From: Gracilinanus agilis | Taxonomy: Eukaryota | Direction of reading: 5' to 3' | Assembly (NCBI RefSeq): GCF_016433145.1 | Contig: NC_058131.1 | Span: forward strand, 487,165,942 to 487,229,941 | DNA: 64,000 bases | Shown: positions 2,181 to 60,471 of the stretch, piece by piece | Layout: each line of letters begins with the position of its first letter | Position numbering within the stretch: position 1 is the first letter of the stretch | Notes under the pieces: model-generated | Databases searched by the model: none | Told to the model about the DNA's origin: nothing | What the model saw: the letters and a program-made list of their open reading frames with translations, nothing else | Position numbers and translations under genes: made by a program

Positions 2181-4009
2181 TTCGTGACATAATGCAGTTG
2201 GGATATGGAAAGCTAGCCTTGAAGATAGGATGACCTGGATTCTAGTCTTCCCTCTGAGATAGTGGCTTCAGTGTCTGAGATTTGAGACACTATAGGCAAA
2301 TCATTTAAGTCTCATAGTAACTCTCCCCTCAATATACCTCCTCCATAATTCTCAGAGGCAATAATTTGCATAGCAGTTATAGGCTTGGATTACTAAAAAG
2401 GATTTATTCACCAAGGGTTCCTTATATTAATGACTTCTCAAGTCTGTTTCCTACAACCTCCTCAAAAAAAATGCCTTCCCCTTTACTATTTATTTTGAAG
2501 TTGATCCTAGGTAATCATTGCGAGGGATATTATACAGGAAATTCCTAAAATTAAACTGGATTACCTGTAAGATGTCTTCAAACTTAGAGATTTTATAATT
2601 ATAACAAGAAACGGGTTATATGATGACTAAGGAAAAGCAGTGTGATATATTGGGAATAGGACTGCATTTGGAATCAGAGGACTTGAGTGAATACTCACAA
2701 TATGGTCAGGGGTAAGAAAAGTGCTGGACTTGGACTTGAAGGCAGGGCTATGTGAATGGGAATCCTTCCTCAGACACGTGCTATAAAATGTTGGGCAAGT
2801 CACTTAAACTCTTATAACTTCAGTTTCCTCATGTGTAAACTGGGAAAATTATAACCCCCATCTCCCAGGTTTCTTGTGAGAGTCAGATGAGATAGCAGAT
2901 AGCAAATGTTGCAAATCTCAAAGCATTATATAAATGTTTACAATTGGTGCTCTTATTAAATCATTTAACCTCTGTGAGCCTCAGTTTCCTCCTCTGTTGA
3001 AAAAAAACAAGTGACCTTTGAAATACCTAAATCTCTGATCCTATATAATTATAAAAATGCTAAGGCCAGGTAAGTAGGTTATAATTAAAATGAAAGGAAA
3101 GAGAACAAAGAAATCTTCTCTCATCTGTGAGGAAATATCTGTCAGGCTTTTGATCTTTATGATGGTAAAAAATCATATCCTGGATAGTATTATTGGAAAC
3201 TACTGTGAATTGATCCATGTAATGGAATCAACGAAACACTTAGGATATGATGTAATGGGATTTTACAGATTACTGCTAAGGCTTACGCTTTGATTTGCTT
3301 TGCTGTTTTCTCCCCACTTTTGAATTAATCTAGCCCAGTGCATCAATCATTTAGTGCCATAGAAATAAAGAATTAAAAGAGTGGTGATGATGGCTTTTGT
3401 AGTTAATCTACTTAAAGCAAATTGTTCAAATTCTCTATATATGGACAGATGCCATGGATAATTCATGATCCTCACATCTCTAATTAACATGAAGAGGTTT
3501 GGAGTAGGCTTGTCAACAGAGAGTGGTAAACATTGTTGTGTACACAAAATTAGTCACAAACTCACCATTAGATTCTGAAAGGTAAATGGAGGAGGCATGG
3601 TGAATTACTTTAACCTTAGAGTGTCCCCTAAAGATTTAGAAACTCGGAGGAGAAAAAAATGAAGGAATGATAACACAAAAAAATGAATGCTGAGCACACG
3701 ATAGTATCGAAGATAGGAGATAAATTAGGAATGGACAGAATGGAGTCTATCTCTTACCAAACTTGAATTTAGTTCAATGCTTGGTGATTGGGTGAGTTTG
3801 ATATACGCTTCTAAACTCAAACATCCTCACTGTTTGCCTTAGAAGTTTTGGATAAGCGATTTTGTTGTTGTTGTTGCTGTTCAGTCAGTAGCATCATACC
3901 CAACCTTCTGGTAGGCACGGATGTGTATTAACTCTGAGAGCAAATGTGGCCAAGATATATTAGGATCCTCAGTAGATATTCTCTCTGTCTCTTTAAAAAC
4001 AGAACAAAA

Positions 4010-4590: not shown

Positions 4591-5446
4591 CAACCCATTG
4601 ACTATTAGTGTTTTAAAATATAATTTTTGTATAAATTTCATAATATTGGGACTTTGATTCAGTTGGATGCAGCCTAATCCTCTTTCTTTGGCATGTGGCT
4701 AGGAAAAGGTTTTGTTTTTGTTGTTTATTTGTTTTTTAAATTTGTTTTAAAGACCAGAGAACATTAAAAGGATTTTGGAATGCCCATGATTACCACAATT
4801 AGAAAATAGATTCTTTTTTATTTAAAGGTTCTAATACATCTAAGTACCTACCTAGTGGGCCAGAACTTCAAAGCATAGAAATAACATTTGTCACAATGGG
4901 TATGTTTCTTGTCAACATTTTTATTTTCTGGATGATGCTCCAAGCATTCAGCAGAGGATGTAAAAAAGATGTCTTTGGGCTTCCATATTCCTTTAACTTA
5001 TATAAGACACTTCTAGAAATGGAACGGGTAGCAACAGCTTCACTGAACACAATATACTTAGAGCTAAGAGGGATCAAAGGCTAGTCTTCCATATTGGACA
5101 TATACTAGATGGGATGTGAGATTAATTCCACTATAGAGGAAAGGAGGACTGGGAAAAGGGTTTTGTCACAATGCATAGAGATCTCAACTACAAAGAAATT
5201 GTCTGTCCTGACCTGTTTCCCAGAAGCAAAGGGAAATGTGAAGAGTGTGTCTTTTTAGCATCTGCTTTGCTATTAATTCATTTTGCCTGCATCTTTAATT
5301 TAGGGTGACAGCAGTCTCTTAGGCCCTGGACACCATCACTCTCAGTAACAAAACGCTCTTGTGTGAGGGACGTTGTTCTCCTCCACAGCTGTTTGGAGGC
5401 AAGTCTCAGCAGCATTGCTGCAGCTGGTGAAACTAAAGGAATTAGG

Positions 5447-5478
5447 CTGACATCTCCCTCTTTCCTTGTCTTTTGCAG
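5447..5478 (+). promoter_or_regulatory. Branch point (CTGAC, A at 5450), polypyrimidine tract and 3' splice acceptor (CAG) of the NRXN3 exon
   Basis: ggctgacatctccctctttccttgtcttttgcag lies immediately before the coding sequence. Confidence 0.85.
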
Positions 5479-5660
5479 CCGGTGCTACATATATCTTTGG
5501 GAAAAGTGGAGGACTCATACTCTACACCTGGCCCGCGAATGACAGACCCAGCACACGCTCAGACCGCCTCGCCGTGGGCTTCAGCACGACCGTGAAAGAT
5601 GGCATCCTGGTTCGAATTGACAGTGCTCCAGGGCTTGGCGATTTCCTCCAGCTTCACATA
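5479..5660 (+). CDS. NRXN3: Neurexin-3 internal coding exon (182 bp, phase 1 in, phase 0 out), first part of the LNS6 domain common to alpha- and beta-neurexin-3
   Basis: Translates to (A/P)[60 protein letters not shown], which matches NRXN3 as I recall it and differs from NRXN1 (GTTYIFSKGGGQITYKWPP) and NRXN2 (GTTYIFGKGGALITYTWPP). AG at 5477-5478, donor GTGAGT at 5661-5666, CpGs retained. Confidence 0.97.
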
Positions 5661-8489
5661 GTGAGTACTGGACCTCAAGCTGGATGTATTTGTTTTGCAA
5701 ACTTTCTCTCTTTCTGTAGTCTAGATTGACTAGATGGAGTGTCCAAGACATGTGCAACAAGTGTGCTCTTAGAAAAAGAGGTGCTGGGCTCATGTGGGTG
5801 AATTCAGTCTAATTCTCCCCACGACAGAAGTCCTAGGATTTGACTTTGGTGGGAGTTGGTGAGAGGAGGAAGTCCACCTCTGATTCCACTTGTGCAAGTG
5901 TCAAAGAGGCCGATCCTCTGTATTCCCTCGTCTCATCTCTGATAATAATTCAGCCACTGTTCACCCACCAGCAATCTAGTTTTCACGTTGTATGAATAAA
6001 GGAAAATTGTTCATGGATTTCTTAATAGTGCCAGGTGCAAAATGAATAGCAGATTTAAATATAAAAGATCTTTCAGTCTATTGTCTTTTTGGAGATTTTT
6101 TTTAGAATGAAAGGTATGGTGAAGAATGGTAACCAAAAGGAAGGGAAAACACCAAGTGTTTTCTAAGCCTTGTGTCTATAAGCCAAATGAGCATTTACAT
6201 TTAGCTATTTGATGCTATGTGGACTCAGTGCAGTTCTAGGAAATTTAAATGATTTGGGGTGGAAAATTGCCATGCTATGATGATAGAAAGTATTTTTATA
6301 GCAACAATTAACCCATTTTATAGTATATGCAGTCTGGAAAAAAAATGTAGGCTAAGAAAGGATATGATTCTCATCTATAAGTACCTAAGTGCAGTTACCA
6401 AGAGTGAAGAGAGGAATTGTTCTCATTAGTTAGCAATGACAAGGCTAGAAAGAATGGATTTAATTTGGAACAATAAAAGTTCAGTTTTAAATAGCAGGAA
6501 AAAGGAAAGCAGTTAAGAGAAAAGATCAGCTGGGGAATGTAGTCAACCTCTGAAAGAAGGAAAATAATCAGATTTACCTAGGAAAAATCTGAGTCAGAAA
6601 CATGATCTTCAGAAAAAACCAAGAGTTATGATGAGGCCATTGCTTGCCAGCCTTTAGAAGCAGCTCTCTGGTTTGGAAGGCTACAACTTCAACTGTGGTG
6701 ACTAAAATTTCTCCTGAGCCCTTTTCAGTTCAGGCTAACTGGGAAAGTTGAACAGGTTGCCATCTTGATTCCCTGGCTGGTGGCATTCTCCCTTCACTCA
6801 GAGCCAGATCCCAAGCAGTATTCCAGGCAGCCCTGGGCAGGAGAGGAGAAATGGTTAGAGATGAGAATTAAAAAACAAAACAAAACATGGAGGCAATGCT
6901 TAGAGTCTAATCATAAAAGCTTTGGTTTCTAGTCTGCTTCTTCCTTCTTTTGTCCAGTTATTATAGTAATGCTGTCTGCTGACTCTTAGGAGCTCTAAAA
7001 ATGAAGTTAAAATGATAAAGAGAAATTAAGTTACTGTTACATGGTGTTTGCCCCAGGGTTTTGCACACAGTAGAAACTTTCTAAGCCTTTGTTGTATTGT
7101 ACTTTTCTAGCATTACTTAATATAGGGTTTGCCCTGGCATTTAGCAATCTAGCAGAGTTGTGGAAATGGAAGGCATTTACTAAGCCTTGGATGTCTTGTA
7201 TTTTAGACCTTTATGAATAAAACCACATTTTGCCAATCTAAATCCTGATATTTTAAAACTAATGTAAGTTGGAAGACTACACAACACGTATTGATTTGTT
7301 TATGGTCATTGCAAACTATATACTGGCAATAGTTTTTTGACATTCTTGTGATTTATTATCTTTTAGAGTGACTAACTAAAAATAATGTGACTTAGGGCTG
7401 CCATATAACAAGTAATTAGTCCATGACCTAAAACCTTTTAATGATGGGGTACTGGTAACTAACTTCATCCATTTCTGCAGCCATAGATATTGGATAGATA
7501 ATTTCCATTCAGATACACGTTTAAGAGAGAGGCTTTGTTGCCCTTTGTGGCACCGAAAGGCTCACTTACCATTTTAGCTTAAATTTTCAGCTGACAATGT
7601 TGGTCCTAAAGTGACATTGGATAGGCATCAGAGCTCAAAGGAAACTTGCAGGCCTTCTAATCCAAACCCCTCATTTTACAGATGAGGGCATTATAAAATG
7701 GGGAGGTTGGACTAAGTGACCTGAAAGGTCTCTTCCAACTCTAAATTCAATGATCTTATGACATGAAAGTATGAGGAACTGTTAGAAGAAGCAAGAACAT
7801 TGCTCAAAATTGTAGCCTTGCTGTAATTGTCATTGGTGTAATTGATGGGTAGATGTTTTCAAATATTTTTTTGAACACAAGAACTGAACTTGTGATTTCA
7901 TCAGTAGAAGAACTCTTGGATTCAGAAATTTCCTCTGCCAGTCAGCATTTTATTTGCAACTTATCTAGTCATAGATAGTTGTCTAATAGGATAAGAGACT
8001 TGTCCAAGGTAGCTTCCATTGTCTTGAACTTAATCTTTGTAAATAAAACTACAATTTTCAAACCTAAATCATGATATTTAAAAAGTCATATGAGTTGGAA
8101 TACTGTGTGTGACATATCAATTGGTTTATGGGCATTTCAACAACAAAAATAGGTAGCAATTGGCAGCTGTTATGTGTCAGAGGCAGGACATGTACACAGA
8201 TCATCCTGGTTCTCAGAGACCATACCATATGCCATCAGACCTTTTCACATAACATATGGAAGTGAATATATTGAATGCATGTTATTAAACATATATATGT
8301 GGGAATATGAGATCCGGATATAAAGTCCAATGATCTCTTCAGCATAGCACATCCAAATGAGTGAGTGCTGTTATATTAAAGTAGGCATCTTGAAAGGGAT
8401 CCCAATAGTAGCTTAGAATAATAATAAAGCCAACAGTTGAGTGTACTTTACAGATGGCAAAGGATTTTTTTTTGGGGGGGTACATTTGT

Positions 8490-11222: not shown

Positions 11223-11499
11223 AATATTGTCTAAATGCCTCTTACTTGTGAGGTGATGTTCTAGATAATGGCAATAACAAAATCCCTGTCCTAAGTAGAA
11301 TTTATATTTTAACATCGTACATGGGAGTCAGTTGACCCGTGTGTAAATGCCTTTCTCATTTCCTTTCTGTGAGTCCCTGGTCGAGTCATTCTTCCACTTT
11401 TGACTTCATTTTCTTCATCTTTAACATGAGTGGTTTGGAATAGATCTTTTCTATGGCTCCTTTCAGAACCAACATTATAATTCTATGATTTGGGGCTTC

Positions 11500-12600
11500 G
11501 CCGCTTGGTATTTTTCTCTCTACTTTCTCTCCCTTGACAACTTTATCCACCCCTTGGCTTCAAAGATTATTTCCACTCGGGTGCTTCCCAAATCTATCTC
11601 TTCGTTCCTGACCTCTCCTCTGGAGCTCCAGTCCTGCATTTAAACTACCTTTTGAATATATCCACCTCCAAGTCCTGCTTTGACCTCAATCTCAATATAT
11701 TCCCATACTGAACTCATCATGTTCTCTTTCAAACTAGTCATTTTTTTTAAAAAATCCCTATTTTTTGATTGATGTCATGATCCCTTAATCTAGTCACTCA
11801 GACACAAAACCTATATATAAGCCATTTTTTAATCTTCCCTCTCTATTACTAGCCATATCTAATCAATTGCCAAGCCTAGCTGATTCTGATTCTAAGCTAC
11901 CTTTTATTTCTCTGTCCTTCTTTGGGCAGCTAGATGACTCAGTGGATAGACCACTAGGCCTAGAGTCAGGAAGGCCTGCGTTTAATGGCAGCCCCAGACA
12001 CTTTTACCAGTTTCCGTGACCCTGGGCAAGTCACTTAAACTGTTTGCCTCATTTCCCTTCATTGAAAAATGGGGATAATAATAGCACCTGTCTCACAGGA
12101 ATGCAAGGATCAAATGAGATAATATTTGTGAAATGCTTAGTATACTGCCTGGTACAACGTAGGTACAATATAAATGATTATTTCTTTACTTTCCACTTCC
12201 ATCACACCCATTAAGATCCTCATTAATTCTTGGTAGCTACTGTAGTTAATCCCTAAATACTTCTCTCCTAATCTCTTTCCTTCCCCAATTCATCCTTCAC
12301 AGTGATGGCAGAGTGGTTTTCCTAAACTACATATCTGACCGCATCTCGCCCATTCTTCTAAGTTAGAGGTGGAACCAAGATGGCGGCTTAGTAGCAGCAA
12401 AAGCTGAAACCTCTCTGAAAATTCTTTCAAACCAATCTGTAAAAAGCACCTCAAAATGACAAGAATAAAAAAAAAAAAAAGATTCTTCTAAGTTAGAGAT
12501 TTAATACCTACCCTATACAATCTGGCACCAACTTGCCATTCCAGTCTTATTTTATGTTATTCCCCATAAATTGCTAATTGGACTCCTTGCCAAATAATTT
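11500..12600 (+). mobile_element. L2 LINE remnant, interrupted by a Mar1/MIR SINE (~11925-12180) and an L1 5'-end insertion (12369-12481)
   Basis: Pyrimidine-rich L2 ORF2-like sequence (ggcttcaaagattatttccac...tcccaaatctat is a decayed GFxYHLYADDSQIY region) and L2 3' motifs. Confidence 0.7.
12369..12481 (+). mobile_element. Isolated L1 5'-UTR start (~95 nt) plus poly(A), flanked by a 17-bp target-site duplication
   Basis: gtggaaccAAGATGGCGGCttag... is an L1 5' start with a YY1 motif (12376-12387); ends aataaa plus A-run; attcttctaagttagag occurs at 12352-12368 and 12482-12498. Confidence 0.8.
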
Positions 12601-13445: not shown

Positions 13446-15034
13446 TTTCTTTGATTTTCTTCTTCCTTCAATAATTTAGTAGGATTATCTGAGCTTAAAG
13501 TTATGTTATGTATACCATTAAAATGACACTTTCTCTGTGAAGACTTCCTTGATCTTCAAAATTTAAAGGGCATTTTGTGTTAAAAAAAAAAAACAAAAAA
13601 ACCAAAAAGTGTGGCCATGAGCAAGTCCCCTAATCTTTCAATAATCAAGGCAATTCTCTAAGTGGCATAGAGTCTGCTGATTTACATTGGAAAGAGGAGG
13701 TTGTTTTTTTTTTTTTTCACTTGAGGGTTCTCTATTCCAGAAAAATCAACCAGGCATTCAGTAAACATTTATTAAGCTCCTACTTTCTATTAAACACAAA
13801 TCCAGTCCCCATTCATATCACCCTATTAGACTATAACCTCCAAGTAGGTGCAGGGACTGGGTCTTTCATCTATTCCAGCGTAAAGTAGGACATAGAAAGT
13901 GCTTTAAGTATTTATTCAATTGAAAAGAAAGACAGACTGTATGTTATTATTCATCCCTATCACTCCACCAGATATTTATATTTTTGTCAATAATTTCCCT
14001 TAAAAATATGATTTTTTAAAAAAATCGAAAGCCAAATGATTGAAAGGTTATTCACTAAAAATGGTCTTTGATGAAATATTCCTTATTTAGAGAATCCAGA
14101 GCTATATTAATGAGATAACAAATGACCTGTGTTGGGTGGGTATAAGTGGATCTTGCCAGCTTAATAACATGTGTTCCCTATAGAGCGAATGCCTATGTCT
14201 TTTTGCATCCAAGTCTCCCTGCTTCATTGAAATCCACTGTTCAGCCATGTGCCTGCCCTGAGCACGTGGTCAGTCTATTATTCTTTTACCCAGGACAGCT
14301 GTCCCTTAGCCCTGGTATCTGGGCACTGAGGCGTTCGGGCACGTCATTCGAACCCTTCTTTACACAGCAGTGCCTGGGAAATGGCTGAACTGTACCAATG
14401 AGAAGATTACCATCAAGTGCCTCCTATTACTATAATAAAACTCTTGATGATCTCCTTTTCACCCCCTATAAGGAGAGGGTAGGGAAGAATAGGGCAGCAA
14501 TTAGTTTCTCTTTATGTAGCTAATACTAGGTGGGGAAAAAAAAAAAGATGACGTCCTATTAGTTTCTCGGTGTTTGTAATTTACAGTAAATCCTTTTGGA
14601 TTCATTTTTTAATTATGAGCCTTTCAGGCACAGTGGAAATTTATGTGCCAAGGCATCTGTTTTGTATCACAAGAATCCGCAGCTTTTACCAGTCATATTC
14701 TCTCCAGTTACTTGCCCGGGGAAGGAGAGGGTTCACCAGGTCAGGATGACCCTGAATCAGAAGTTTAGAGCTGCCCCCATTTCAGCAGTTTATACCCCGG
14801 AAGGAAGATGTTCTGGAAGTGGTTGTTTTGGAATTGTTCTGGAGGTTCACCTTTGCAGATGATGAGAAAAGAGGGTTTTAAATGAAGGAATGAAGTGAGG
14901 ATGGGGCAATATTCTTTCGGGTTTCAGATTTGGATAAGCAAAACAAGATAAAGGACCCAAGTTTGTGTGTTGTGATTATCTTGTATCTTATACAAGAAGA
15001 AACTAGGTAGATAATGATCCCCCTATCTTTGTTC

Positions 15035-16445: not shown

Positions 16446-17829
16446 AGTCAAAAAAACCCCAGAAGACTAAAAGGTAGAGGATAAGGGACTCACTTTCCTT
16501 TTGTATAAAATATCACAGCATACAAACTGCCAACTAGGGCCCTTTATCAGGGATGCTTATCATTTTGGTTTTGACAACCAGCCACTCTCCACCAGGTAAT
16601 TCTGTGGTGGGTTTAGGTAACGACTTGTTTTGATTCATCTCCATCATGAATTGAGAGCTAGAATGGGTTCCTCTAGTTCATCCGCACACTGATAGGAATA
16701 CAAAGCATAAAAAAATGGAATTAACTTGCCCAAGACCAAAGAGAAGATGACAAATGACTGAGGCAGGATTTGAAATGAAGGCTTTTGGCTCCATGTCCAG
16801 TACTCTTCCTTCTTCTAAACCATATTGACTTCACTTGTGATCCTTTTTGATCTCTGACACATAAACAACCCATTCCTTAGGAGTATCTATGAATGCAGAA
16901 ATCACCACCCTGGACACGTTATCTTGGCTGTCTCTGACTTGGATATTTACAGCAGAACAACATCTTCCAGTTTGTTCCTCAGTGGGACTAGGTGGCAACT
17001 CTTAGATGATTATTCTGTGGATTTGGCCAGCGGCTGCATTGGATTTCATTCAGGAACTGTGTTTGGGGGGAATCTCAAAAGATGAACAGAGGAATGTTGG
17101 AACTCCCGAGTGTGGTGCCTGGGCCCACGTGGGGTATGAGAACAATAAAATGACAATGGTGTCCGCCAGGTCTAATTCCATTTCCCACAGATGACTGTGC
17201 ACTGCAGGCCAGTTATAATTCCTTCCATTGCTGTTTCTTCTTAGTGACAAAGTCCTCTTTGAGTTTCCTAGGCTTAGGAGCTTTTCCAGCTCATTAGACA
17301 CTTGTGTGGAGAGAGCCTGCTGGGGATTCTCTCAGCAGCTTCCAAGCTTAGATGTGCCATCTCGGCAGAGACAGAGGAGAACATGGTGGGAGGGAGTTGG
17401 AGCAGGGATTTGATGAATTGGAAGGCTTATGTAAGCCATGCTGCGGTTAGAGTATTGGCCAGGGCATTTGTGAGTGGTATATATGCTTTGGCCTCTGTGT
17501 ATCATTCCCAAGTTACTGCTATTGGAACCTATTAGCCCATTTTCCCCATCTACATGATATTTGTGATTTCTTGATATTAAATTTACACTTCCCTTTTGTG
17601 TTTCTTAAACTGGATACCCAGATATTGATTAATCTATCAGAGAAAAGGGATGCATAGAAAAGAGAAATAGTTCAATTTGAAAAGCCAATTTTTTTGGCAT
17701 GCCTACTGTGTGTCCAACATGGCTTTGGAAGCAATCCTAGACATTGTAAAAGTTTCTGATTATGGTATTTAAGGCTTTCCACAAACGGGCTCCAACCAGT
17801 CATCCACTCTTATCTCAATCAACACCGCT

Positions 17830-21670: not shown

Positions 21671-22749
21671 TAATAAAAGGTCTTCTGTGAAAAAATTTTT
21701 AAAAGAAAAAAACATGAAGATACTTTATCAGTTCTCTTTACTCAAATGGGGGTCTTCTAAAGTTTCAAGCATGGACTTTACTGATATAAAAGAAGCCCAT
21801 TACTAGAGTGTCTAGCTTTGGTACTTTTGTATAAAGAGAGTGGCATAAGATTCCAATATTTTGTTGTTAAGGTATTTCAGTCAGTGCAACAGGAAACAGG
21901 GTAAATCCCAGATACTTTGAAGTGAATTCTATCCCTGATACAACTTAATGGTGAATAGGACGTGGCATCATTGGTTCAATGTAGTATATTATTGACCTAT
22001 GCCCTACGCTGTTGCCAGTTGTTACTCCAGGGGTAGTGTTCAGTGAAACCATGCAAGAAATAGCACATTGGCTCCCTGTAGCTAAAGATGATGGATTTTG
22101 TATGCCTGGCTGTATTTAGAGTGCACGAAGACTCAGGATATTGATATGGGAATTCATTAGCCACCCACTCGGTGGAATCATAAGCTTAGATCCTAGTGCT
22201 GCCACTACTCCTGCTAAGGTGAGTTACTGCATCTCTGAGAGATGGCAAAGGAAAGTGTAAGACTATATTAGCCTCAAAGATGAACTTGACAGCTAGTCCA
22301 GTAACTTCCCAGCCCGAGGATGACATTTTTGGAACCAAGAGTCACTTAAAGTCGTTTAGGTAAGCTTACCTTAATCCAACAGAGAGAGCTGTCCCTCACA
22401 CCAGTCAACCCATACTCATAATTATAGGAAATGGCTGTTATTAAAATTGCATTCTATTCCTAGATCTGTCATCTATGACCATAATTCCTTTTTTAGTCAA
22501 TTTATTTTTGTCTTCACCCTGTGAGAAATGAAATAAGGGGCTATAAGTTGTTCTCTGACAAAGAATGGGGATGTCTTTTAAGTAATTGTAAATATAACAA
22601 AGTGGTATGATGATCTCTTCTTTATTATCTGTTACCATCACAGTGTGTGGTCTTTTTTCCATGCTGAATAATGCCCCATAGCACCTAGTGTTTTGTTCCT
22701 TTTATAGTTTCTGACAAATGCAACCTTAAGTTTTGGGGGACCTTAGCAA

Positions 22750-23549: not shown

Positions 23550-25129
23550 GTTGGGATATAATCTCTTTCCTTCTCCTTCTTATCCTAATTCCCAAATATG
23601 AGAAACTTGGGAGAGTGGACAGTTCATAATTTGAAGTGATACTGCCATTTAAAGGAGAATAAAACATCAATAAGATATGATAGAAAAAGTATGAAACTAG
23701 AAGTCAAAAAATTTGGCCTCTAATGTCCTTTTTAATTTTATGTCTAGCATGATACGATAATCATATATCCTAGTATTTAGTGCCAGCTGTACTATTAACT
23801 TGCTATATGATCTCAAGTAGGTCCCTTAACATTTCTATGCTTCAGTTTCATTGACTCATAAACTCTTAATAGACAGCCCTCATTTTTACAGCTCTGCTTC
23901 ATTGGTTAGATTAAGAAACTGAGATGCAGAGAAATAAAGTAATTTGCCCCAGGTTATATAAATTATGAAAAGAAAAAAAGAGCATTTATTAAGTACCTAC
24001 TATGTGCCAGGCATTATGCTATATTTTTTCCTATTTGTTTTGGTTTTTTAATAATATTTCATTTGATCCTTATAACATCCCTGGGAGGTAGGTGCTAACA
24101 TGATCCCTATTTTACAGTAGAGGAAACTGAGGCAAATAGAGGTTAAGTGACTTGCTCAGGATCACATAGCTAGTAAGTATCTGAGGCTGGATTTGAGCTC
24201 GAACCTTCCTGACTTGAGGCCCATACTCTATCCACTGCTGGTTCCTAGATCATTCATGGGCTATCCCTTTATCTTTAATATGTAGGGGGTTGTCCATTTT
24301 TTCTGCTATAAAATTCCATGATCCTACCTCCTCTGGTGCCTGGATTACATCCTAGTGCTATACTTAGTTGAGCAGGGCTCTTTTTAGCTCTTTGCCAGTG
24401 ATCACAGTTCCATGAAGCATGAGATTTGATTACCCTTATCATTATCTTAGCTTGGATAGCTGTGTATGTTATTAGTGGTCATAAAATTATCCAGCCCTTT
24501 CATAAATGCACACCACAGTACTTATATCAGTGACCTCTTTTGGTAATGAACTCTACAGGTTGGCTGTACACAGCACAGAGAAGCGTTTCTTTAATGGCTG
24601 CTATAATTTGTCTTACAGCTCGGTCCATCTTGTTTTTTTCTTTGGTGGAAGCATTTATCTGAGGAAGTGAACCCTTCCTCACCCCCCCCCCCCCACTGTC
24701 AAGATAATGACTAATACTGCACTACCCATGTTGCTTTGGATCATTCCCTACTTTTGTGATCTTCTTAACTAGGGAGAGCTTATAATACTGGTGATACCAA
24801 CTTTCTAGGAACAGAGTAGGCTTGATATGCCTAAATGGACTATGGAAGCAGGTTTAAAGGAGATTGAAGCTAAAATTGTACTCAACTAAATTTCTATTGA
24901 GTCATAGAAATCTTTACAGGCTTACACATTCCTGTTTGTTTTCTAAGAACAGCACTGTGTATCCCTGGAAGACTGTTAAGCCTGTTTTTGTTTTTGTTTT
25001 TTTCATTTCAAACAGTTATCACAAAAGAGATCTCAAATTCCTTATTTGGTGTTGAAGTTCCAGAGATAGGGATTATGTTCTCACTTCAGTGGAAGTCTTT
25101 CAGGTTGGTCTCTAAATGGAGACTCAAAT

Positions 25130-25500
25130 ATAGTCTCACATTAAAATGACATCAACTTGCTTACCTCACCATCTAAAGGACACATCTCCTTGCCCCCTGC
25201 ATTTATACTGATTATTCCCCATTCCTGGAATGGTCTCTCTTCTTCTCTCACTTCTTAGCTTCCCTGGATTCCTTTAAGATAAGTCAAAAAATTTCTTCTT
25301 CTATTGGAGAACATTCATGTTCACTCCATACTTCTATCCCACCTTTTGATATCACTTTCTATTGTGTTTGTATATACATGTAATTTACTTGTCTCTTCTT
25401 TAGCACGTGAGCTTGAGGGCAAAAAGCAGTATTTTGTTTCTCTTATTTAAATCCCTGATGTTTTATATTGTAGCAAGCACTTAATAGATGTTGGTCGACT
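25130..25500 (+). mobile_element. L2 3' fragment
   Basis: cccattcctggaatggtctctct...ttagcacgtgagcttgagggc...agcaagcacttaatagatg. Confidence 0.7.
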
Positions 25501-25789
25501 CACTTAGAGGATCACCTTCCATCCATTCCAGGAATTGTTAGCCTTTTTTGTGTATCACCTTACTTTGACAGTATAGTGAAACATATAGTCTCCTCATAAT
25601 TAATTTATTATCATTTTAATACTACGTGGCAGAGTAGATAAAGTGCCAGATATGAGTCAGGAAGATTCATTTTCCTGAGTTCAAATCTGACCTCACACAC
25701 TCACCAGCTGTGTGACCCTGTGCAAGTCATTTAATCCTACTTGCCTCAGTTTCCTCCTCTGTCAAACATCAAACAGCAATAGCAAAATT

Positions 25790-25936
25790 GTTTTAAAACT
25801 TATAATTGAGGTAAATGCTTAGTTTCATTTAAAGGTTAGTAAAAACGGATTTTTTTCCTTATCCAAGTGTATAGGCTCCTTGAAATATATGCATGAACCC
25901 CTTGGGGATCCATGAGCCCCAAGTTAAGAAACCTTT
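25790..25936 (-). mobile_element. Charlie4-like hAT terminal fragment
   Basis: aatgcttagtttcatttaaaggttagt...ggggatccatgagccccaagttaagaaacc; the terminus matches that of 51006-51241. Confidence 0.6.
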
Positions 25937-26049
25937 TCTATTCCCTACAAGATATGTACTGATTTATACCTAGGTGGTCTCCCCTATGTGTATATTCCCT
26001 GAGGTCAGTACCAGTTTTTGTATTCCCAAGGAACTTAGATGACTCTGGG

Positions 26050-26220
26050 GATGGCCATGTCTGGAGATGAGTGGTTTGGGGTTCAAATCTGCCCTCAGAT
26101 ACTTTCTGGCAGTGTGACCCTAGGCAAGTCATTTAATCTCTCTTGCCTAAGCCCTCACCACTCTTCTGCCTTGAAATTAATACTTAATGTCAATTCTTAG
26201 ACAGAAGATAAAGGTTTAAT
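26050..26220 (+). mobile_element. SINE1_Mdo-type SINE, 5'-degraded
   Basis: ggttcaaatctgccctcagatac...gcctaagccctcaccactcttctgccttg...cttagacagaagataaaggttt. Confidence 0.8.
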
Positions 26221-26982
26221 TTTTTAAATTGTATTTCCAATCATTAATATGATGTCTGACACATAATAAACTCCCAGTCAATGCTTGTTGATTGATGGAC
26301 TGTTTTTGATGGTCTGGAGCCATCCCTTTACTAATAAAGACCTTAAATTTCAATGAGTTGCTCTTATTAAAAAAAAATCAGCACTTGGTGTCTTCTTCTG
26401 ATGATTGGTCTAGCTAAATGTAACCATTTGTTCTCAAATAAATTATGCACAGCATATGGATAGGCTTTTTTGAAACCTTTCTGACTTAGTTAAGACCTGA
26501 AAGACCATGTGCTTCACTGCCAATAGAGCTTTTGCAAAAAGCAGGTTTACTTCCTAGTTAACTACATTGAAGTAAGATAAAAATTTAGTAGAGAAGGTGC
26601 CAGGTGAAAAACCTGCCAAGATGAGTGCTAGAGAACACAAAGTGATCCCCCAAAAGACAAATTAAAATTGATGCTGAGTGTAATGAGCATCTCATTTTTA
26701 AAATTTCTAATATAAACCAGAATATTATTTTGTGCACTGCACCACCTGAAATCTGTCTTTCTTGGCTAGAATTAACAGTAGTACCAGATTACAAGAAAAA
26801 TTCAAGCATTCTTTCAATCTCCAAATCCCATCATTTATTAGTGAAGGGGTTCTTGCTTCTGTCACTTTCCCCAACTTGAAATCTGAATCTTTATCATAAA
26901 AGGGGATTAATGTTTCATCAGAGGATATAGGTTTAGAGCTAGGAGAGACCTTAGAGGTCACTGACTTCAACATCCTTATTTT

Positions 26983-27164
26983 TTTTTAAACCCTTAACTT
27001 CTGTGTATTAGTTCCTTGGTGGAAGATTGGTAAGGGTAGGCAATGGGGGTCAAGTGACTTGTCCAGGGTCACACAGCTGGAAAGTGTCTGAGGCCAGATT
27101 TGAACCTAGGACCTCCGGTCTCTAGGCCTGACTCTCAATCCACTGAGCTACCCAGCTGCCCCCT
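26983..27164 (-). mobile_element. Young full-length SINE1_Mdo-type SINE with TSD, nested in an older MIR-like element
   Basis: Reverse strand reads ggggcagctgggtagctcagtggattgagagtcaggcctagagaccggaggtcctaggttcaaatc...; TSD aa(c/t)atccttatttt at 26969-26982 and 27165-27178. Confidence 0.92.
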
Positions 27165-27721
27165 AATATCCTTATTTTATAGGAGAGGAAACAAGTTCAA
27201 AGAAGACAAGCAACTTGCCCAAGAATGCAATTTGAACTCAGACCTTATGTCCTCAGAAAGCATCCTTTGCTCCATATTACTTCTGTGTCATCTTGGCAAC
27301 CTTTCATTTTGCAAATGAGGAAACTGAGACCCAGAGAACTTATATGACTTTGCTAATGTCCCCATAAGTATATTGAATGCTAGTGGCAAGATTTGAACTT
27401 TTGTCTTCTGACCCCAGCTTTCTTTCCACTGAATCACATAGCCTTCTTATCAGTATACCAGAGATCATTTTGTTCCTGCTGAAGCAGCGAAGCTTAGATT
27501 TAATAGCAGAGCTCATGGAGTCCAGTCTGTTAACATTTATTAGGTGCTAGTGTCAGACACTGTGCTAAATGCTGGGGATAACAAGAGGAAGGAAGCAAGA
27601 AAGGAAGAAAAGAAAGAAGGAAGTCCTTCCCCTCAAGGAGCATACAATCTAGTTTTGTTGTTCAGTCATTTTTCACTCATGTCTGACTCTCTGTGATCCC
27701 ATTTGGGATTTTCTTGGAAAA

Positions 27722-28158
27722 TGAAGTGGGGGGAAAAGTCACGAATATGCTACTCTGTGTCTGCTGTTGATGTCACTGATGAAGCAGATGATAAGAGAGG
27801 CATAGTTTCCCATGAAATCAAGAACCAGGCAAATGCTTTGGAAGCCTGTAATGATGATATTAGTAGTATGTAATTAGAATTTTGTACCCTTGAACTTGAT
27901 TCTGAGCACCCCACTCTCCTCTTGTCATTACATGCTAATGTAGGCAGGATATAAATTGCGTAGTTCCGCCTCTTGCTCTCTTCTCTTCCTGACAGGGCTT
28001 TGGTGGAGTGGTTCTTTTAAATAGGCAAGAAGATCTTGGGCATATGATTTTATTTTGTTAGCTAATTATTCTTTTTATTCCTTTACTTCAAGTGATTATT
28101 AATAAATCTTATAAAAATATAATAGTTGGAGTATTGGATATTAATTTTTAATCTTACA
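27722..28158 (+). mobile_element. ERV LTR-like element, possibly 5'-incomplete
   Basis: TG start, TATA-like gatataaattg, downstream aataaa, ends ...ttttaatcttaCA; no TSD found. Confidence 0.6.
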
Positions 28159-28224
28159 ATAGCTCTCCTTCCCCCAACCCCATAATCATTTTAGGTAGGT
28201 AGGAGAAATGATATTATTCCCATT

Positions 28225-28450
28225 TTTGTTGTTTAGTCATTTAGTCATGTCTGATTCCTCATGACCCCATTTGGGGTTTTATTGGCAAAGATCCTAGGAT
28301 GGTTTCCTCCTCTAGCTTATTTACAGATGAGGAAACTGAGGCAAACAGGGTTAAGCGACTTGCCCCGAGTCACATAACTAGTAAGAATTTGAGATCCAAT
28401 TTGTCCTCAGAAAGATGAATAGTCTTCCTAAGTCCAGGCCCAGCACTCTA
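28225..28450 (-). mobile_element. Mar1-type SINE with RTE-like tail
   Basis: catgaccccatttggggttttattggcaaagat...tttacagatgaggaaactgaggcaaacagggttaag. Confidence 0.88.
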
Positions 28451-28639
28451 TCCACTGAGCCACCTTGCTATCTAAGAGGGGAAGACAAAACATAAAAGAC
28501 AGCTGAATGGAATGGAGGTACAGAATTAAAGAAATTTTATACACACACACAAATCACTTCAACTACTACTTTTTAAATGTAGTTGATTTTCTGATGAAAG
28601 ATAAAATCTCTCCAAAGGTCTAATAGCTAAATTAGACTG

Positions 28640-28832
28640 CAGCATATGGCAGGAAGTGTAAAATGCCACCCTTAACTGCAGGTAGGATGTGGGTGGGTGG
28701 AATGCAATTATCCAATTTAGAATTAGCTGGGGATAGCAGGGTTTAATACCTTACCTTTGTGCAAAGCAGCACGAAATCCATAATGAATACAAGCACTCAG
28801 GACCTCTGGTCTTTCGGTCATTATTAAAAGGT
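28640..28832 (-). mobile_element. AmnSINE1-like (DeuSINE) ancient SINE, Deu domain and 3' part; weak similarity may extend to ~29020
   Basis: Collinear blocks match the reverse complement of the AmnSINE1 consensus as I recall it: caggaagtg, aactgcagg, gaatgcaattatcc, aatttagaattagc, gggtttaatacc-tacc-ttg, taatga, acaag...tcaggacctc. Not database-verified. Confidence 0.72.
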
Positions 28833-29959
28833 AACAGGACTATGCTTTTAGCTGCCTGCTGCTGCGGTCACAGTGTTGACTCACCTGTTGGCCAGTGACT
28901 TCACTGGAAGCCATGTGGTTAGAAGGAACACCTTGCTCAACCCCCTCATTCTTAGGAATATGAGCGACTGCTGCCTCCCTTTCAGCAGCATCCAGTTATC
29001 CTTCCCAGTATCCATTCATGTTTCACAAACCCTTAAATAACAGATGACAGCAATATAATAAAATCAGCACTCTCTGAGAAAGGCAAATGCCATTTACAGA
29101 ACTCCTTGCCCCATTTCTGACGGACCTTCCAAATCCGCTTTTGTTCCCCTATCCATATACTGACCTTGCTTTCCTTTGTATCTATTTTCATTTTTTAATT
29201 AAATATGTTACAATACTAGAACATTATAAAATGTTATGTAATAATACATGAAATTAACATGTATATATTAAGGAGGACTTTTTATAGCATTGACCAATCC
29301 AGATGTCCTTAGTAATGGAGAATGAACAAATAAAGAGGAAGGAAAAAGCAGTTCAGCAAAAGTAAGCGTTATATCACCTAAGTCTGACCATACGTGCAAT
29401 GATCTATACCCACAGCTGCCCCTGTTCCCACCTTGGTAAAGAGAGGGAGGTTTGCATCTTTTTTCAAGATCATTTATTTAATGGGTAGTCTTCTCTTTTT
29501 AGTTAACTGAATGCTGAGAAGAAACAGAATGGAACATCATGCTTTCCCTTGATTAATATCCAAATGTACTGAAACACAGAGGATGTGCCTCCTTCTTCAA
29601 ACTGTATGTGTGTGTTAAATATTCACCAATATTAGGCTTAAATGACAAGCAAAATATGTCCTCTGTGGAGGGGGAAAAGTGGAAATCTTTCATTTTTCCA
29701 ATTGAGGTACTTTATTTAAGTTAGATTTTTACGAATGTGCAAGGGGAGCTCTTTTTACATAGCAATTTTTTTAATTATAAAAACAACTCTCAGCCAAATG
29801 TGTCAGTTCTGTCAACTTCAAAAGAGAGTTAGAATGAGGCAACATGATTAGATGGAAAGAGTGCTGGTCCTAGAGTCAACAACCTTGGATTTGAGTCCCA
29901 GCTTTGACAATTATTAGCTATGCAAATCCTTTATCTTTTGATCCTCAGTTTCTCCATCT

Positions 29960-30195
29960 TTAAAATGTTAGATGATTCAGTGGAGAGAGTGCTGAGCTTG
30001 AAGTCTGGGAGACTCATTCCTGAGTTTAAATCCAGCCTCACACACTTACCATCTTGGACAAATCCCTTGACCCTGTTTACCTTAGTTTCCTACATCTATC
30101 AAATGATAGGGGAAAGGAAGTATCAAATCACCGAAGTATCTTTGACAAGAAAACCCTAAATGGGATCACAAAGAGTTGGACAAGAATGAAACAAA
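29960..30195 (+). mobile_element. Mar1-type SINE with RTE-like tail
   Basis: Head and CORE followed by agtatctttgacaagaaaaccctaaatgggatcacaaagagttggaca. Confidence 0.85.
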
Positions 30196-32359
30196 AAACC
30201 CCAACAGATATGAGAATAATCCTTATTTCTCTTACTTGCCTAAAATGCTTGTTGTGGAGACGGAAATGTGTTATTAATATCTTCATTCCAGGCCTCTGCA
30301 TCATTTGCCTAGTTCTTGACTTCAAGGATAATCTTATTCCTTTTATCTTCTACTTCAGCAGTGACACTGACAGAAGACTTGAAGTATCCTATTCTTGACT
30401 TTTTTCAACCTGGTATGTAGGCTAAAGTTTGATTGTCCCTCCCTCTGAGGTAGCTACCTCTTTAAGATATCAATGTCATTAGATTGTTTTAATCTTGTTT
30501 TCTATTGTTTTAATCTTGTTTCTATATGTCTGGATTAGAATGTTTCAGTCCCTTTCTTAGGGAACCTGTTCTCCCGTTCTATTCTTTGGACATTAAAGAA
30601 CATTTTTTTCCTCTGAAAATTTTGCTTTAATATTCTTCCATTGCTCCAGGCCATTGCTTCCAGTCATATCATCTGAAATGGAGAATTTTTCTTTTCCTTT
30701 AATAATATTATTACTTTGAAGATATTTATAAGTACTAGGATCATATGCCATGCTCATCTAAAATGCTTTTCGAAATTCAGCTAAAAAATGCTTTTTGAAA
30801 TTATATAAATTTAGCACCTACTATCTTTCTTTAAATGATTTCATGTTTATCTCTTACATCACTACTATTCTTCATTGTAGTTTTTTTTTCTTTCTGATTT
30901 TTCACCATCTTTCCTAAACAGAGGAGTTCAAATACCTGATAGTTCAGGCATCTCAGTGAGTCTTTCTAATTGTGAAAAATGAAATCTGGCAAGAGGTTTA
31001 CTTTAAAAATATCAGGTTAATCTGTTTTGCTTTTCCAGAACAAATAGATAAAATATCAAAATAGGAAACTGTCAAGATACTTTCTTGTAATTTGTATAGA
31101 TTTTTTCTCAGTACCTTGCTTAAAATAATCCTTTTGAAAGCTGAAGTAATAAAACTACTGTATTTCTGAGAATTAAAAAAAAAATCCCAATTGGCTTCCT
31201 GGCTACTACTTAAAGTAAGATCGCCTATGCATTCTGGTTTTGAATGAAGATACAGCAAGGGGACTTCTGTAGGGGTTGAGTCCAAGAGATTTCAGTTGTT
31301 GATTGATAATCTCTGTTTCTATAATATCTTTTTAAAATATCAAGGACTTGAAGGGTTTGGGGTTCAGGAGGAGAAATCAGCATTATATATTTATTTAAGA
31401 AAAATAAAACCCAACACGAACCCAAACTGAAACAAAATCTTTTAATTATGCTATTGGGGCAAGCATGAAAGTCAGATGCAAAGCTTCCAATGCTAGCAGT
31501 ATCCCACTGATATAGCAAAAGACCTGCCCAGAAGTGTCTTTTACATGAGGTTTTGGTTGCAAGCTTCAGTGAGTGTTATAAAGAACAAAGACTAAGACCA
31601 ACCTGCAGTGGGGAAGGGGCAAAGATCTGCTCTTCCACAAAAGATGCCTTTGCTCATCAGAATTGTCTCGTAGGAATCATAGATAGGTGGAACTAGAATG
31701 CAACATGGAGACCACTGAGCCCCACTCCCTAATTTTATAGATGAGAAAATAGCACCAGACAGATTATGTGATTTGGTTTCATGGCTAATAATCAGAGCCA
31801 TTTCTAAGATATTTCTTTTGACACAGTCCCATGTGATGTTTAGAATTAAAGATGAAAGTCATCTAATACAACTTTATTATTTTATTGATAAGGAAACTGA
31901 CTCCCACAGAGGTTATGTAATGGGTGGTGCTTCTTTGTATCCCTACATTTAGCACACTGCCTGGTACATAATGAGTGCTTAATAAATGTATATATATGTG
32001 GCTTCTAGCTAACACAGTAGATAAACAGATCACTGGACCTAGAAACAAGAGAAGACCTGAGTTCAAAAATGACCCCAGTTATTTACTAGCTTTGTGACCC
32101 AGAGCAAATCTCTTAACCCCTGCCTCAGTTTCTTCATCTGTGAAATGGGAGTAATAATAGACCCTGCCACCCAGGATTTCTATTAGGATCAAATAAGTTA
32201 ACATTTGTAAAGAACTTTTCCAATCTGAATATACTGTATGCTACCTATTAATACTTATCATCATATAAAATATAATCTAAAATCCTAATTTACAGTAAAA
32301 GAACCTTGATATATGGGCAAAATACCAACATAGCTTCTAATTTCCCTCTCTTCATTTCC

Positions 32360-32780: not shown

Positions 32781-32934
32781 CTTAATTCCATACTTCCCAT
32801 AACATTTGAGGCTTGTAGAAACAGAGAGGAACTATGATGAAAATATCAAGGTCAGACACTGTGTTAAACAGTGAGGATTCAAAGAAAGGCAAAAAAAAAC
32901 TTGTTCCTGTCCTCAAGGAGTTCCCACTCTAGTA

Positions 32935-33278
32935 CAGTGATGGCAAACCTTTGACACGCATGTCAGCACTGACACATGTAGCCATTTTCGATGACACGTA
33001 GCTGCATACAGAGAAGTATAGGGCCGCATGCCGAGGATGAAACATTTGCTATAGTATAGTGTAGACACTCTGTGCACTATAGATGACAATTCTACCTATA
33101 TTAATATACCTATTTTGGTTTATTAAATACGGTTATATATTACAATTATACATTTTTGTTATTTAAACTATAAATATAGCGAAATTATGTTTTTTTTTTT
33201 CTCCAACTGACACACCACCCGAGTTATGCTCAGTGTTTTGGCGAATTTTGACACACCAAAGCAGGTTGCCCATCACTG
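32935..33278. mobile_element. Non-autonomous hAT MITE (344 bp), OposCharlie1/OC1-like
   Basis: 16-bp TIRs cagtgatggcaaacct (32935-32950) and aggttgcccatcactg (33263-33278) match at 14/16; 8-bp TSD ctctagta/ctctagtg; repeated subterminal GACAC motifs; interrupts an L2 remnant. Confidence 0.9.
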
Positions 33279-35798
33279 CTCTAGTGGGACAGACAGTGTG
33301 CAAAAAGTTGGGTGTATGAGATCTACAGTGAAAATGGCAGATAATCCCAGGCAGAAGTAGGAATGTGGGACTTGGAGGTGAGGGGAATTAAGGAATTGCC
33401 TACAGCAAAAGGTGAGGCTGGAGCTGAGTTTCAAGAGAAGTCAGGAGGCAGAGTGGAAAGAAGCACTTCATTTAAAGAATGATCATCTACCCTATCTTAA
33501 TTCTTGGCTGTGGAAGAATCTGTGTCACCACCTTAATTCTAGACAGAGTTCCCTTCCCCCAGTCCCCTGGAGTGCTCATATTTTTCTCTAGCTTTCAGGA
33601 GCAAGGAGTGTTATTAAATGATAAGGGGGCTTGCTTTCTGGTTTCATATTGTGAGAGCCTGGGAAACAATACATGTTTTGACATATTAGACAGCATGTTA
33701 GCTCTGATTATGAGAACTCCATATCAGAAAGGAAATCATATGACAGGACTGCTGTGTCTGGGAAGCTGCAGTTCTTTCCAGGGGGGTTATTAATGGATCT
33801 TCATACCTTTGAGGACAGATTGCCAAGTCTGGACGATGAGATAATTGGAGATAAGCCATTTATCATAAACAGAGTGTCCACACCTAAGGGCTGGTGCTTA
33901 TGTCTGTGGCCCTAAGCAGGTTTCAGACTCTTTGAACACAAGAAACCTGCAATAGTGATAGGAGATGATTTGCTGCAGGTCACTGTGAATCATCACCCAT
34001 TGGCAATCGTTGGCATTGTGGCATGGTGGAAAGAACCTGTATTCAGGGAGGGAGATAGCAGTGAGAAGATTTATAACTTGAGTCCTAGCTTAGCCACTGG
34101 CTAGCTGTATAACCCTGGGCAAGTCATTTACATTCTCAAAACCTAAATTCCTTCATCTATGAAATGGGGATCATCATATTTGTCCTGGTCTACTTCACAG
34201 AAGTTCTTTGATGATCTATTTTTTTTTAAGGTGAAAACATTTTGAAAAGCTAAATAACAAAAAGGTAAGATTGCATTGTTGTTTGGTATGTTTTTAAATA
34301 ACTCATTGTCCAAGTGGCATAATAGAAAGAATATGGAATTTGGGGTCTGAGCACATAGTTTCAAATCCTCACTGTCCTATTTATTGACTGAGTGACCCTA
34401 GACATGACACTTCTCTAGATGTGTTTCCTCATCTATAAAGGGAAGAGGTTGGACTAGATGCTCCCTAAGGGTTGCTCCAATTTCAAATCTTATGATATTG
34501 ACAGTATAGTCAACCCTGATTTCAAAAACACTGGGATTCAAGTCTCTCCTCTGTGTTATTCTAGGTAAGTCACTTAACCTCTCATTGCCTCCAAGAACAC
34601 TTTAAAATAAGTTATAGAGCAGGTAGGAATCTGCTTTGATACAAGGATCTTCCTGTGTATTTGTGCATATGTGTGTAGGGGGATTAAAAGGGACTTGTTA
34701 CTCCCTAGAACACATCTTATTATAGCTAATATAGTTAATATACTTTCTGAGTTTCTTCTTTCCTTTAAAATATAATTTAGAATTCAGCTCTTTCAGGGTA
34801 TCTTCCTTGATTCATTCTATATAGAGAGTTCTTTCACTTTGTTGCCATCTGCTCCTCTTTGCACTATTCAGTCATCATCTGAGTTATTTTTAAAAGTACT
34901 TTTAAAGTTTTTTTTTTTTCAAATTTCTTTTCTGTATCTTTAACTATACTAGAAGCTGCATGAAGAAACAGTATATTCTTGTTTTCTCATTCTCTATCCT
35001 TTCTACTCTATCTTATTATAATTTAGTTACCCAGTATACTGTTTTTGCCTTTTTAAATCTAACCTTAGATACTTACTAGCTATGTGACTCACGACCATGA
35101 TCTCTGATCTTTTGAGTCTTAATTTACTCATCTATAAAATGGAAATTTTACACTAATAGTATCTACTATGGAACATAGAATGAGAAAGGATTTCAGAGGC
35201 AGTGACCAACATTCTCATTTTACATGTCAATTTGGAAAAACACAGAACCACTAAAGTATTCAGCAAAATGAAATCTTTTATCAGGAAAGAGACAAGTCCT
35301 TAAATATTGGCCACCACATAGAGTCCAGTACTAAATACCACACAAGTCAAAAGGCTGGGGCCTCTGAGGACAGTCTTTGAGAAAAGCACCATGCTAGATG
35401 ATTCTCCAAAGAACAATAAAATTTAGGGACTTAAATACCTTTTGGGGAGCCAAGGATTTGGAAGTATGATTGATTGGCTTTACAATGGCTACAAGGAAAT
35501 TAACTGCCAAAGACAGGATTATCAGGGAGAGGCTGTTACTTTACAATGGATACTAAAGAAAGAGTCCAATCAAGGGCTTGGCTTTCATGTAGAAGTCTTT
35601 GCTACTATGGGAGAAACTACTAAAACAAAAAGGGTATTTAATATTTGATTATATCTACTACTCTCACCTAAACTGGGATGTTAAGTACTTTAAGGTCTAT
35701 TGTTCAGTCTGAAATTAGGTCAGTCTCAGACTTTCCTGAAGGTATTTTTCCAAGTGTAAGAAATAAAATTTAGTTATTATAGTTATATCTTTAAAATA

Positions 35799-60434: not shown

Positions 60435-60471
<37 letters not shown>
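60435..60471. repeat. (TCA)12 trinucleotide microsatellite
   Basis: Read directly; it produces the poly-His run in ORF 60238-60585. Confidence 0.96.

What the first reader, a model, noticed from the sequence alone, without database searches (positions are those of the whole stretch)
28640..28900. AmnSINE1-like ancient SINE in a neurexin intron, with AP-1 and E-box motifs beside it
Seen: ~190 bp of collinear similarity to the reverse complement of the AmnSINE1 Deu domain and 3' region as I recall it, followed by TGACTCA (28877-28883) overlapping CACCTG (28882-28887), within a repeat-poor stretch running to ~29150. Known: AmnSINE1 predates the mammal-reptile split, surviving copies are often conserved non-coding elements, and some act as forebrain enhancers (the Fgf8- and Satb2-linked copies). 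Inference: a still-recognisable copy in NRXN3 is the best candidate in this window for an exapted neuronal enhancer. I cannot tell whether this copy has been described.
Basis: partly seen in the sequence, partly recalled or inferred. Interest (0 to 1): 0.7.

Follow-up and report, generated by a model that had tools for sequence, protein, structure and literature searches.

The report
Small conserved element in NRXN3 intron
About 170 bases inside a long intron of the opossum neurexin-3 gene are conserved between marsupials and a whale, so they are probably an ordinary regulatory element, but the claimed ancient-SINE origin could not be tested and the AP-1/E-box motifs beside it look incidental.

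Summary
The site lies 23 kb downstream of a neurexin-3 LNS6 exon (5479-5660, + strand), so it is in an NRXN3 intron.

I fetched the orthologous gray-whale intron. It shows one significant conserved block under the finding, 28597-28768 (116/173 identical, 75 bits against at most 27 for 200 shuffles). It is collinear with eight other conserved blocks. A eutherian orthologue therefore exists for the left part.

The right part (28769-29487) holds the AP-1/E-box pair and has no significant whale counterpart. Both motifs occur at chance frequency in the window. The same 11-mer is also a perfect minus-strand splice donor, CAG|GTGAGT.

No 5S or tRNA head was found nearby.

This block is the shortest and among the least similar of the nine conserved blocks. 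Two others reach a bird. It is not the best enhancer candidate in the window.

Verdict: an ordinary therian conserved non-coding element, probably cis-regulatory, of unproven SINE origin. The scan had not noted it before.

The parts
28597..28768 (.). Therian-conserved non-coding block; the real feature under the finding
   Evidence: Opossum against gray whale L002:31006-31175: 116/173 identical (67%), 4 single-base gaps, 75.4 bits. 200 dinucleotide shuffles gave mean 19.8, sd 2.0, max 26.8. nhmmer E 6e-12. It is collinear between anchors 24400-24574 and 29488-29759.
28691..28703 (+). Best-conserved core, GGGTGGGTGGAAT (a CACCC-box-like run followed by GGAAT)
   Evidence: 12/13 identical in whale (GGGTGGGAGGAAT) in the alignment. 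Reading it as a KLF/SP plus TEAD/ETS-type site is inference only.
28640..28900 (-).
   Evidence: Only 28640-28768 falls in the conserved block. AmnSINE1 similarity was not testable. There is no 5S, tRNA or L2-type RNA family hit at E<=10 in 27500-30000, and ARAGORN finds no tRNA.
28877..28887 (+). TGACTCACCTG: an AP-1 heptamer overlapping an E-box. Its reverse complement is CAG|GTGAGTCA, a consensus 5' splice donor on the minus strand (exon side 28887-28885, GT at 28884-28883)
   Evidence: Motif counts are at chance. CAGGTRAGT occurs 3 times in the window against 1.1 expected. There is no significant whale counterpart for 28769-29487.
28169..28504 (.). Old multi-copy marsupial SINE forming the left boundary of the unique stretch
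   Evidence: Self-BLAST gives 10 or more copies in the window at 62-83% identity.
29844..30403 (.). SINE-family repeats forming the right boundary; 29934-30403 is an inverted copy of the left-flank elements
   Evidence: 28169-28499 matches 30265-29934, and 27734-27865 matches 30403-30272.
5479..5660 (+). NRXN3 coding exon (first exon of LNS6); it fixes the gene, the strand and the intron
   Evidence: Acceptor ...ttttgcag|, donor |gtgagt. 59/59 residues identical to 3mw4_A, E 4e-36. Conserved in camel, whale, goat, bird and Xenopus loci.

Best explanation
28597-28768 is a short non-coding element that has been conserved since before marsupials and placental mammals split. It sits in the very long NRXN3 intron that follows the first LNS6 exon. 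It is one of a collinear series of at least nine such blocks in the part of this locus that could be compared. The most likely function is ordinary cis-regulatory DNA (an enhancer or silencer) bound by transcription factors; the best-kept core is GGGTGGG(T/A)GGAAT. Shown: the position in NRXN3, the orthology and conservation, and the non-coding character. Inferred: that it acts as a regulatory element, and on which gene. The neighbouring TGACTCACCTG (AP-1/E-box, or a minus-strand splice donor) is not part of the conserved element and is most likely a chance or opossum-lineage feature. Whether the element began as an AmnSINE1 copy is open.
For: Gene and strand. Orthologous whale locus with eight other collinear blocks. 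Block 28597-28768 matches L002:31006-31175 at 67% over 173 bp, 75.4 bits against a shuffle maximum of 26.8, and it is the only significant hit between the flanking anchors. It is non-coding: four 1-base gaps, stops in all frames, and no ORF on record. There is no significant RNA structure: single-sequence z = -1.8, and the consensus fold is only -14.6 kcal/mol over 172 nt. Runs of four other coded organisms from about nine studies hold 0.35-0.40 of the sampled 31-mers of 28600-29150. CpGs are retained: 6 in 28751-29150 against 1.55 expected. NRXN3 is among the non-transcription-factor genes richest in ultraconserved elements (PMC13513235).
Against: Only one eutherian, the gray whale, could be compared at this position. 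The camel and goat loci stop about 2 kb short and the bird locus about 1.5 kb short. 67% identity over 173 bp is modest, and this is the shortest of the collinear blocks and among the least similar. No motif class is enriched. No chromatin, reporter or RNA data could be consulted, because read laying was lost to a filter trip. The 31-mer sharing has no neutral control, and the organisms are coded.
Confidence: 0.55

Rival explanations
1. One reading: the conserved block is a surviving AmnSINE1 copy (Deu domain plus 3' tail, minus strand) that was exapted as a neuronal NRXN3 enhancer, as at the Satb2 (AS021) and Fgf8 (AS071) loci.
For: The phyletic pattern fits: an orthologous copy is present in a marsupial and a eutherian, so the element predates the therian split. 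AmnSINE1-derived conserved elements are typically 40-250 bp fragments conserved among mammals, usually without the 5S head (PMC3234267; PMC5065162 S3 Table).
Against: No tool result supports it. No 5S or tRNA-derived part, or any related RNA family, was found within 1 kb. No paper holds both AmnSINE1 and NRXN3, and no chr14:78-80 Mb locus appears in the S3 Table part read (loci 1-45; part 2 was not read), which covers only AmnSINE1 elements that sit next to another conserved repeat, so it is a subset of all AmnSINE1 elements. By my own rough estimate, not measured here, AmnSINE1 accounts for well under 1% of therian conserved elements.
Confidence: 0.1
2. The interval is a transcribed or exonic feature. 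One version is a first exon of an antisense transcript: a TATTTAAG box near 29033, an ATG at 28914, ten codons, then the consensus donor at 28885|28884. Another version is a sense-strand cryptic or recursive exon using AG|GT at 28681|28682.
For: CAGGTGAGT is a perfect donor. A 37-codon open frame ends exactly at it. Seven small runs guessed to be RNA, from two other organisms, hold the same share of words as the DNA runs.
Against: The donor region has no whale counterpart. Perfect donors occur 3 times in 64 kb against 1.1 expected, so one by chance is unremarkable. The sense-strand AG|GT is AG|AT in whale. No ORF longer than 24 codons starts at the ATG. The 'RNA' label of the runs is a guess, and intronic pre-mRNA could explain their presence.
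Confidence: 0.1
3. There is no function. The block is slowly decaying unique intronic DNA in a locally cold region, and the 31-mer sharing only reflects close relatives.
For: No motif enrichment. Modest identity. Unique stretches and similar CpG densities are common in the window.
Against: After roughly 160 million years neutral DNA is unalignable, as the flanks here are. The block scores 24 sd above the shuffles and lies in exact collinear order with the other blocks.
Confidence: 0.2

Closest known systems
AmnSINE1-derived enhancers AS021 (Satb2) and AS071 (Fgf8), and AS3_9 (Wnt5a)
   Same: A short non-coding block, conserved between marsupial and eutherian, close to or inside a neural gene, of a size typical of surviving AmnSINE1 fragments (PMC3234267, PMC3427154, PMC5065162).
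   Different: Those loci align significantly to the 570-bp AmnSINE1 consensus and have reporter data. Here neither is shown, and no 5S or tRNA part was found.
Intronic conserved and ultraconserved non-coding elements of NRXN3/NRXN1
   Same: The same gene family, intronic, and collinear with a series of other conserved blocks. NRXN3 is listed among the genes richest in such elements (PMC13513235), and NRXN1/NRXN3 share paralogous conserved sequences (PMC3595034).
   Different: At 67% identity over 173 bp this block is far below ultraconserved level. It was not masked as human-like in the window, and no run outside a handful of organisms shares its 31-mers.
Consensus U1-type 5' splice sites and recursive splice sites in long neuronal introns
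   Same: CAG|GTGAGT on the minus strand, and an AG|GT junction on the sense strand at 28681|28682.
   Different: Neither is conserved in the whale orthologue. No RNA evidence is available.

Membership tests
AmnSINE1 (SINE/5S-Deu-L2) | Significant alignment to the 570-bp consensus (Deu domain and 3' tail) | not testable with these tools
   There is no Dfam/Repbase model and no AmnSINE1 sequence available by reference. The papers hold it only as images.
AmnSINE1 (SINE/5S-Deu-L2) | 5S rRNA-derived head | tested here: not met
   cmscan against Rfam found no 5S_rRNA hit at E<=10 in 27500-30000 or at E<=1 in 27100-64000. Truncated copies usually lack the head, so this does not exclude a fragment.
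AmnSINE1 (SINE/5S-Deu-L2) | tRNA-derived region | tested here: not met
   ARAGORN finds no tRNA in 27100-30500, and there is no tRNA hit.
AmnSINE1 (SINE/5S-Deu-L2) | L2-type 3' tail with stem-loop | tested here: inconclusive
   No LINE 3'-element family hit. No significant fold in 28500-29300. No similarity to other repeats in the window.
AmnSINE1 (SINE/5S-Deu-L2) | Insertion older than the therian split (orthologous copy in marsupial and eutherian) | tested here: met
   28597-28768 matches whale L002:31006-31175 in collinear order. The bird locus ends before the site, and there is nothing within 10 kb of the exon in Xenopus.
Conserved non-coding element / enhancer | Orthologous conservation well above unalignable flanks | tested here: met
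   75.4 bits against a shuffle maximum of 26.8. It is the only significant hit in 24575-29487 against whale 29790-32238.
Conserved non-coding element / enhancer | Non-coding | tested here: met
   Four single-base gaps in 173 columns. Stops in all frames. A pseudo-peptide search found no relative.
Conserved non-coding element / enhancer | Cluster of transcription-factor motifs beyond chance | tested here: not met
   Seventeen motif classes were counted, and none is in the top 5% of 551-bp windows. AP-1 and E-box are at chance.
Conserved non-coding element / enhancer | Open chromatin, H3K27ac or reporter activity | not testable with these tools
   No such data are reachable.
Exon / splice site | Splice signal conserved in the orthologue, and junction reads | tested here: not met
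   The minus-strand donor region is unalignable in whale. The sense-strand AG|GT is AG|AT in whale. Junction reads could not be examined.

The most novel reading that the evidence does not exclude
The 170-bp block is a previously undescribed AmnSINE1-derived enhancer of NRXN3 shared by marsupials and placentals. In opossums it has been extended by a lineage-specific module carrying an activity-responsive AP-1/E-box site.
Probability: 0.07. Interest if true: 0.4.

Novelty: new member of a known kind. Interest (0 to 1): 0.2.

Why it matters
NRXN3 is a synaptic organiser gene with a huge and poorly mapped regulatory landscape, so a catalogue of its conserved intronic elements is useful. On present evidence this block is one modest entry among several stronger ones in the same intron. 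It would gain interest only if a SINE origin or enhancer activity were shown. Even then it would add one more case to a class already known from the Satb2, Fgf8 and Wnt5a loci.

Tried and rejected
No read-level conservation or RNA evidence was obtained. Afterwards no letters of 27048-27086 were sent to any search tool, and they were replaced by N in every later cross-species BLAST. One later self-comparison of the whole window, run in the closed sandbox, did include them.

(2) Orthologue hunting that failed: exact look-ups of 12 window ORFs; two metagenome scans; a pseudo-peptide search of the block.

(3) A 20-mer recalled from memory as a fish SINE core was scanned in viral and prokaryote contigs to fetch Deu-type copies by reference. 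It gave zero hits. On reflection the motif probably belongs to V-SINEs and not to the Deu domain, so I dropped this lead.

(4) Loci that stop short of the site: camel, goat and bird. Hamster and alligator gene ranges were too long for DNA to be returned. Logan contig L005 ends 4 kb after the exon and was not used.

(5) Cluster P0007 (358 contigs from many sources) may be human, so it was not fetched or compared.

(6) Structured RNA was rejected. A recursive splice site was rejected because it is not conserved.

(7) Repeat-poverty and CpG retention do not distinguish this region from others in the window.

Full report
Where it is. The window is CpG-depleted vertebrate DNA with 248 CpG against 2043 expected and no N runs. 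Earlier notes of this scan name the genome as the agile gracile opossum. They also place neurexin SS1 microexons 1.46 Mb upstream on the same piece.

The window holds one neurexin coding exon, at 5479-5660 on the + strand, with a clean acceptor and a GTGAGT donor. Its 59 comparable residues are identical to PDB chain 3mw4_A and only about 75% identical to neurexin-1 and neurexin-2 chains. That chain is labelled neurexin-2-beta in the PDB copy. From memory it is the neurexin-3-beta LNS domain. NCBI names for close database hits say neurexin-3. The finding therefore lies 23 kb into the NRXN3 intron that follows the first LNS6 exon. The next exon is beyond the end of the window.

The observation. 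TGACTCA (28877-28883) and CACCTG (28882-28887) are exactly where stated. They are not more than chance: 11 against 10.7 expected, 14 against 22.3 expected, and the 11-mer with up to one mismatch once against 0.97 expected. Read on the other strand, the same 11 bases are CAG|GTGAGTCA, a perfect 5' splice donor antisense to NRXN3, preceded by a 37-codon open frame. Such donors occur three times in the window against 1.1 expected.

None of 17 transcription-factor motif classes is enriched in 28600-29150. The stretch 28505-29843 has no paralogue in the window and is flanked by old SINE copies. Unique stretches of this size and comparable CpG density are common here.

The AmnSINE1 claim. Papers confirm the background. 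The consensus is 570 bp and consists of a 5S head, a tRNA-derived part, the Deu domain and an L2-type tail. Conserved copies act as enhancers at Satb2 and Fgf8 (PMC3234267, PMC3427154, PMC4824008). The consensus itself exists only as images in those papers, and there is no repeat library among the tools. The decisive alignment therefore had no reference and I left it out.

The indirect tests are negative but weak. No 5S, tRNA or LINE-tail family appears at E<=10, and ARAGORN finds no tRNA. No paper links AmnSINE1 with NRXN3. The part of the published list that I read (loci 1-45 of AmnSINE1 elements that sit next to another conserved repeat) has none in the NRXN3 region.

Conservation. Runs of four other coded organisms, from about nine studies, hold 0.35-0.40 of the sampled 31-mers of 28600-29150. 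The read-laying run was lost to a filter trip at 27048-27086. Several ways of fetching orthologues failed.

The route that worked used the stop-to-stop ORF around the NRXN3 exon as a protein query. It returned small partial gene models on long NCBI contigs, and their DNA could be fetched. The gray-whale locus L002 covers the orthologue of window 3.2-31 kb.

Opossum and whale share nine collinear non-coding blocks in addition to the exon:
- 3206-3661
- 6169-6584 (77%)
- 14228-14708
- 16890-17436
- 21883-22509
- 24400-24574
- 28597-28768
- 29488-29759
- 30527-31054

Most of these are confirmed in camel and goat as far as those loci reach. The blocks at 14536-14705 and 22044-22200 are also found in a bird.

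Between the anchors on either side, the only significant match is 28597-28768 to L002:31006-31175. It has 116/173 identical positions and scores 75.4 bits, against a mean of 19.8 and a maximum of 26.8 for 200 shuffles. nhmmer gives E 6e-12.

The remainder of the region, 28769-29487, which includes the AP-1/E-box pair, has no significant counterpart. The orthologous whale interval there carries sequences that look like lineage-specific L1 and MIR elements. That identification is by eye and was not tested.

The conserved block has frameshifting gaps and no open frame. It has no convincing RNA structure. The sense-strand AG|GT at 28681|28682 is AG|AT in whale. The best-kept core is GGGTGGG(T/A)GGAAT at 28691-28703. 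Nothing but the exon aligns to Xenopus within 10 kb.

Interpretation. The real feature is a 170-bp therian conserved non-coding element that overlaps the left half of the reported interval. The most likely mechanism is transcription-factor-bound regulatory DNA acting on NRXN3. This is an inference from position and conservation. It is the shortest of the nine collinear blocks and among the least similar, so the claim that it is the window's best enhancer candidate fails. The AP-1/E-box/donor 11-mer is best read as incidental or opossum-specific. A SINE origin is compatible with the age of the element but rests on recall alone, and I put it at about 0.1.

They were replaced by N in all cross-species BLAST queries. 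They were present only in one later self-comparison of the window inside the closed sandbox. Protein cluster P0007 may be human, so I did not fetch or compare it. Locus L005, of unknown organism, was fetched but not used.

Noticed in passing
window 6169-6594, 14228-14708, 16885-17436, 21883-22509, 24400-24574, 29488-29759, 30527-31054, 3206-3814: Eight further collinear non-coding blocks are conserved between opossum and eutherians (60-82% identity, 175-630 bp). 14536-14705 and 22044-22200 are also conserved in a bird. These are stronger enhancer candidates than the reported one.
   Followed up: partly
window 5152-5478: About 330 bp of intron directly upstream of the NRXN3 exon is conserved in camel, whale and goat together with the exon. 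This may be splicing control or beta-neurexin promoter-proximal sequence.
   Followed up: no
window 27734-28504 and 29934-30403: The unique 1.4-kb stretch is bracketed by inverted copies of the same two-part old SINE (66-75% identical). The left copy is split by about 300 bp. This is probably two independent insertions.
   Followed up: no
L002 31180-31980 (gray whale): The whale interval orthologous to opossum 28769-29000 is filled by sequences that look like a cetartiodactyl L1 fragment and a MIR-like element. They may have replaced or pushed apart ancestral sequence there.
   Followed up: no
window 32897-34052 and 11236-11894: These unique stretches have the highest CpG density outside the exon (9.5 and 10.6 per kb). 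No eutherian locus at hand reaches 32897-34052 (whale L002 ends near window 31054); 11236-11894 lies within the compared range but gave no hit.
   Followed up: no
window 60436-60471: A (CAY)12 run reads as twelve histidines in a 115-123-codon ORF. It looks like a microsatellite and not a gene.
   Followed up: no
By the tool's own words the filter also trips by chance. The place lies in a marsupial SINE.
   Followed up: no
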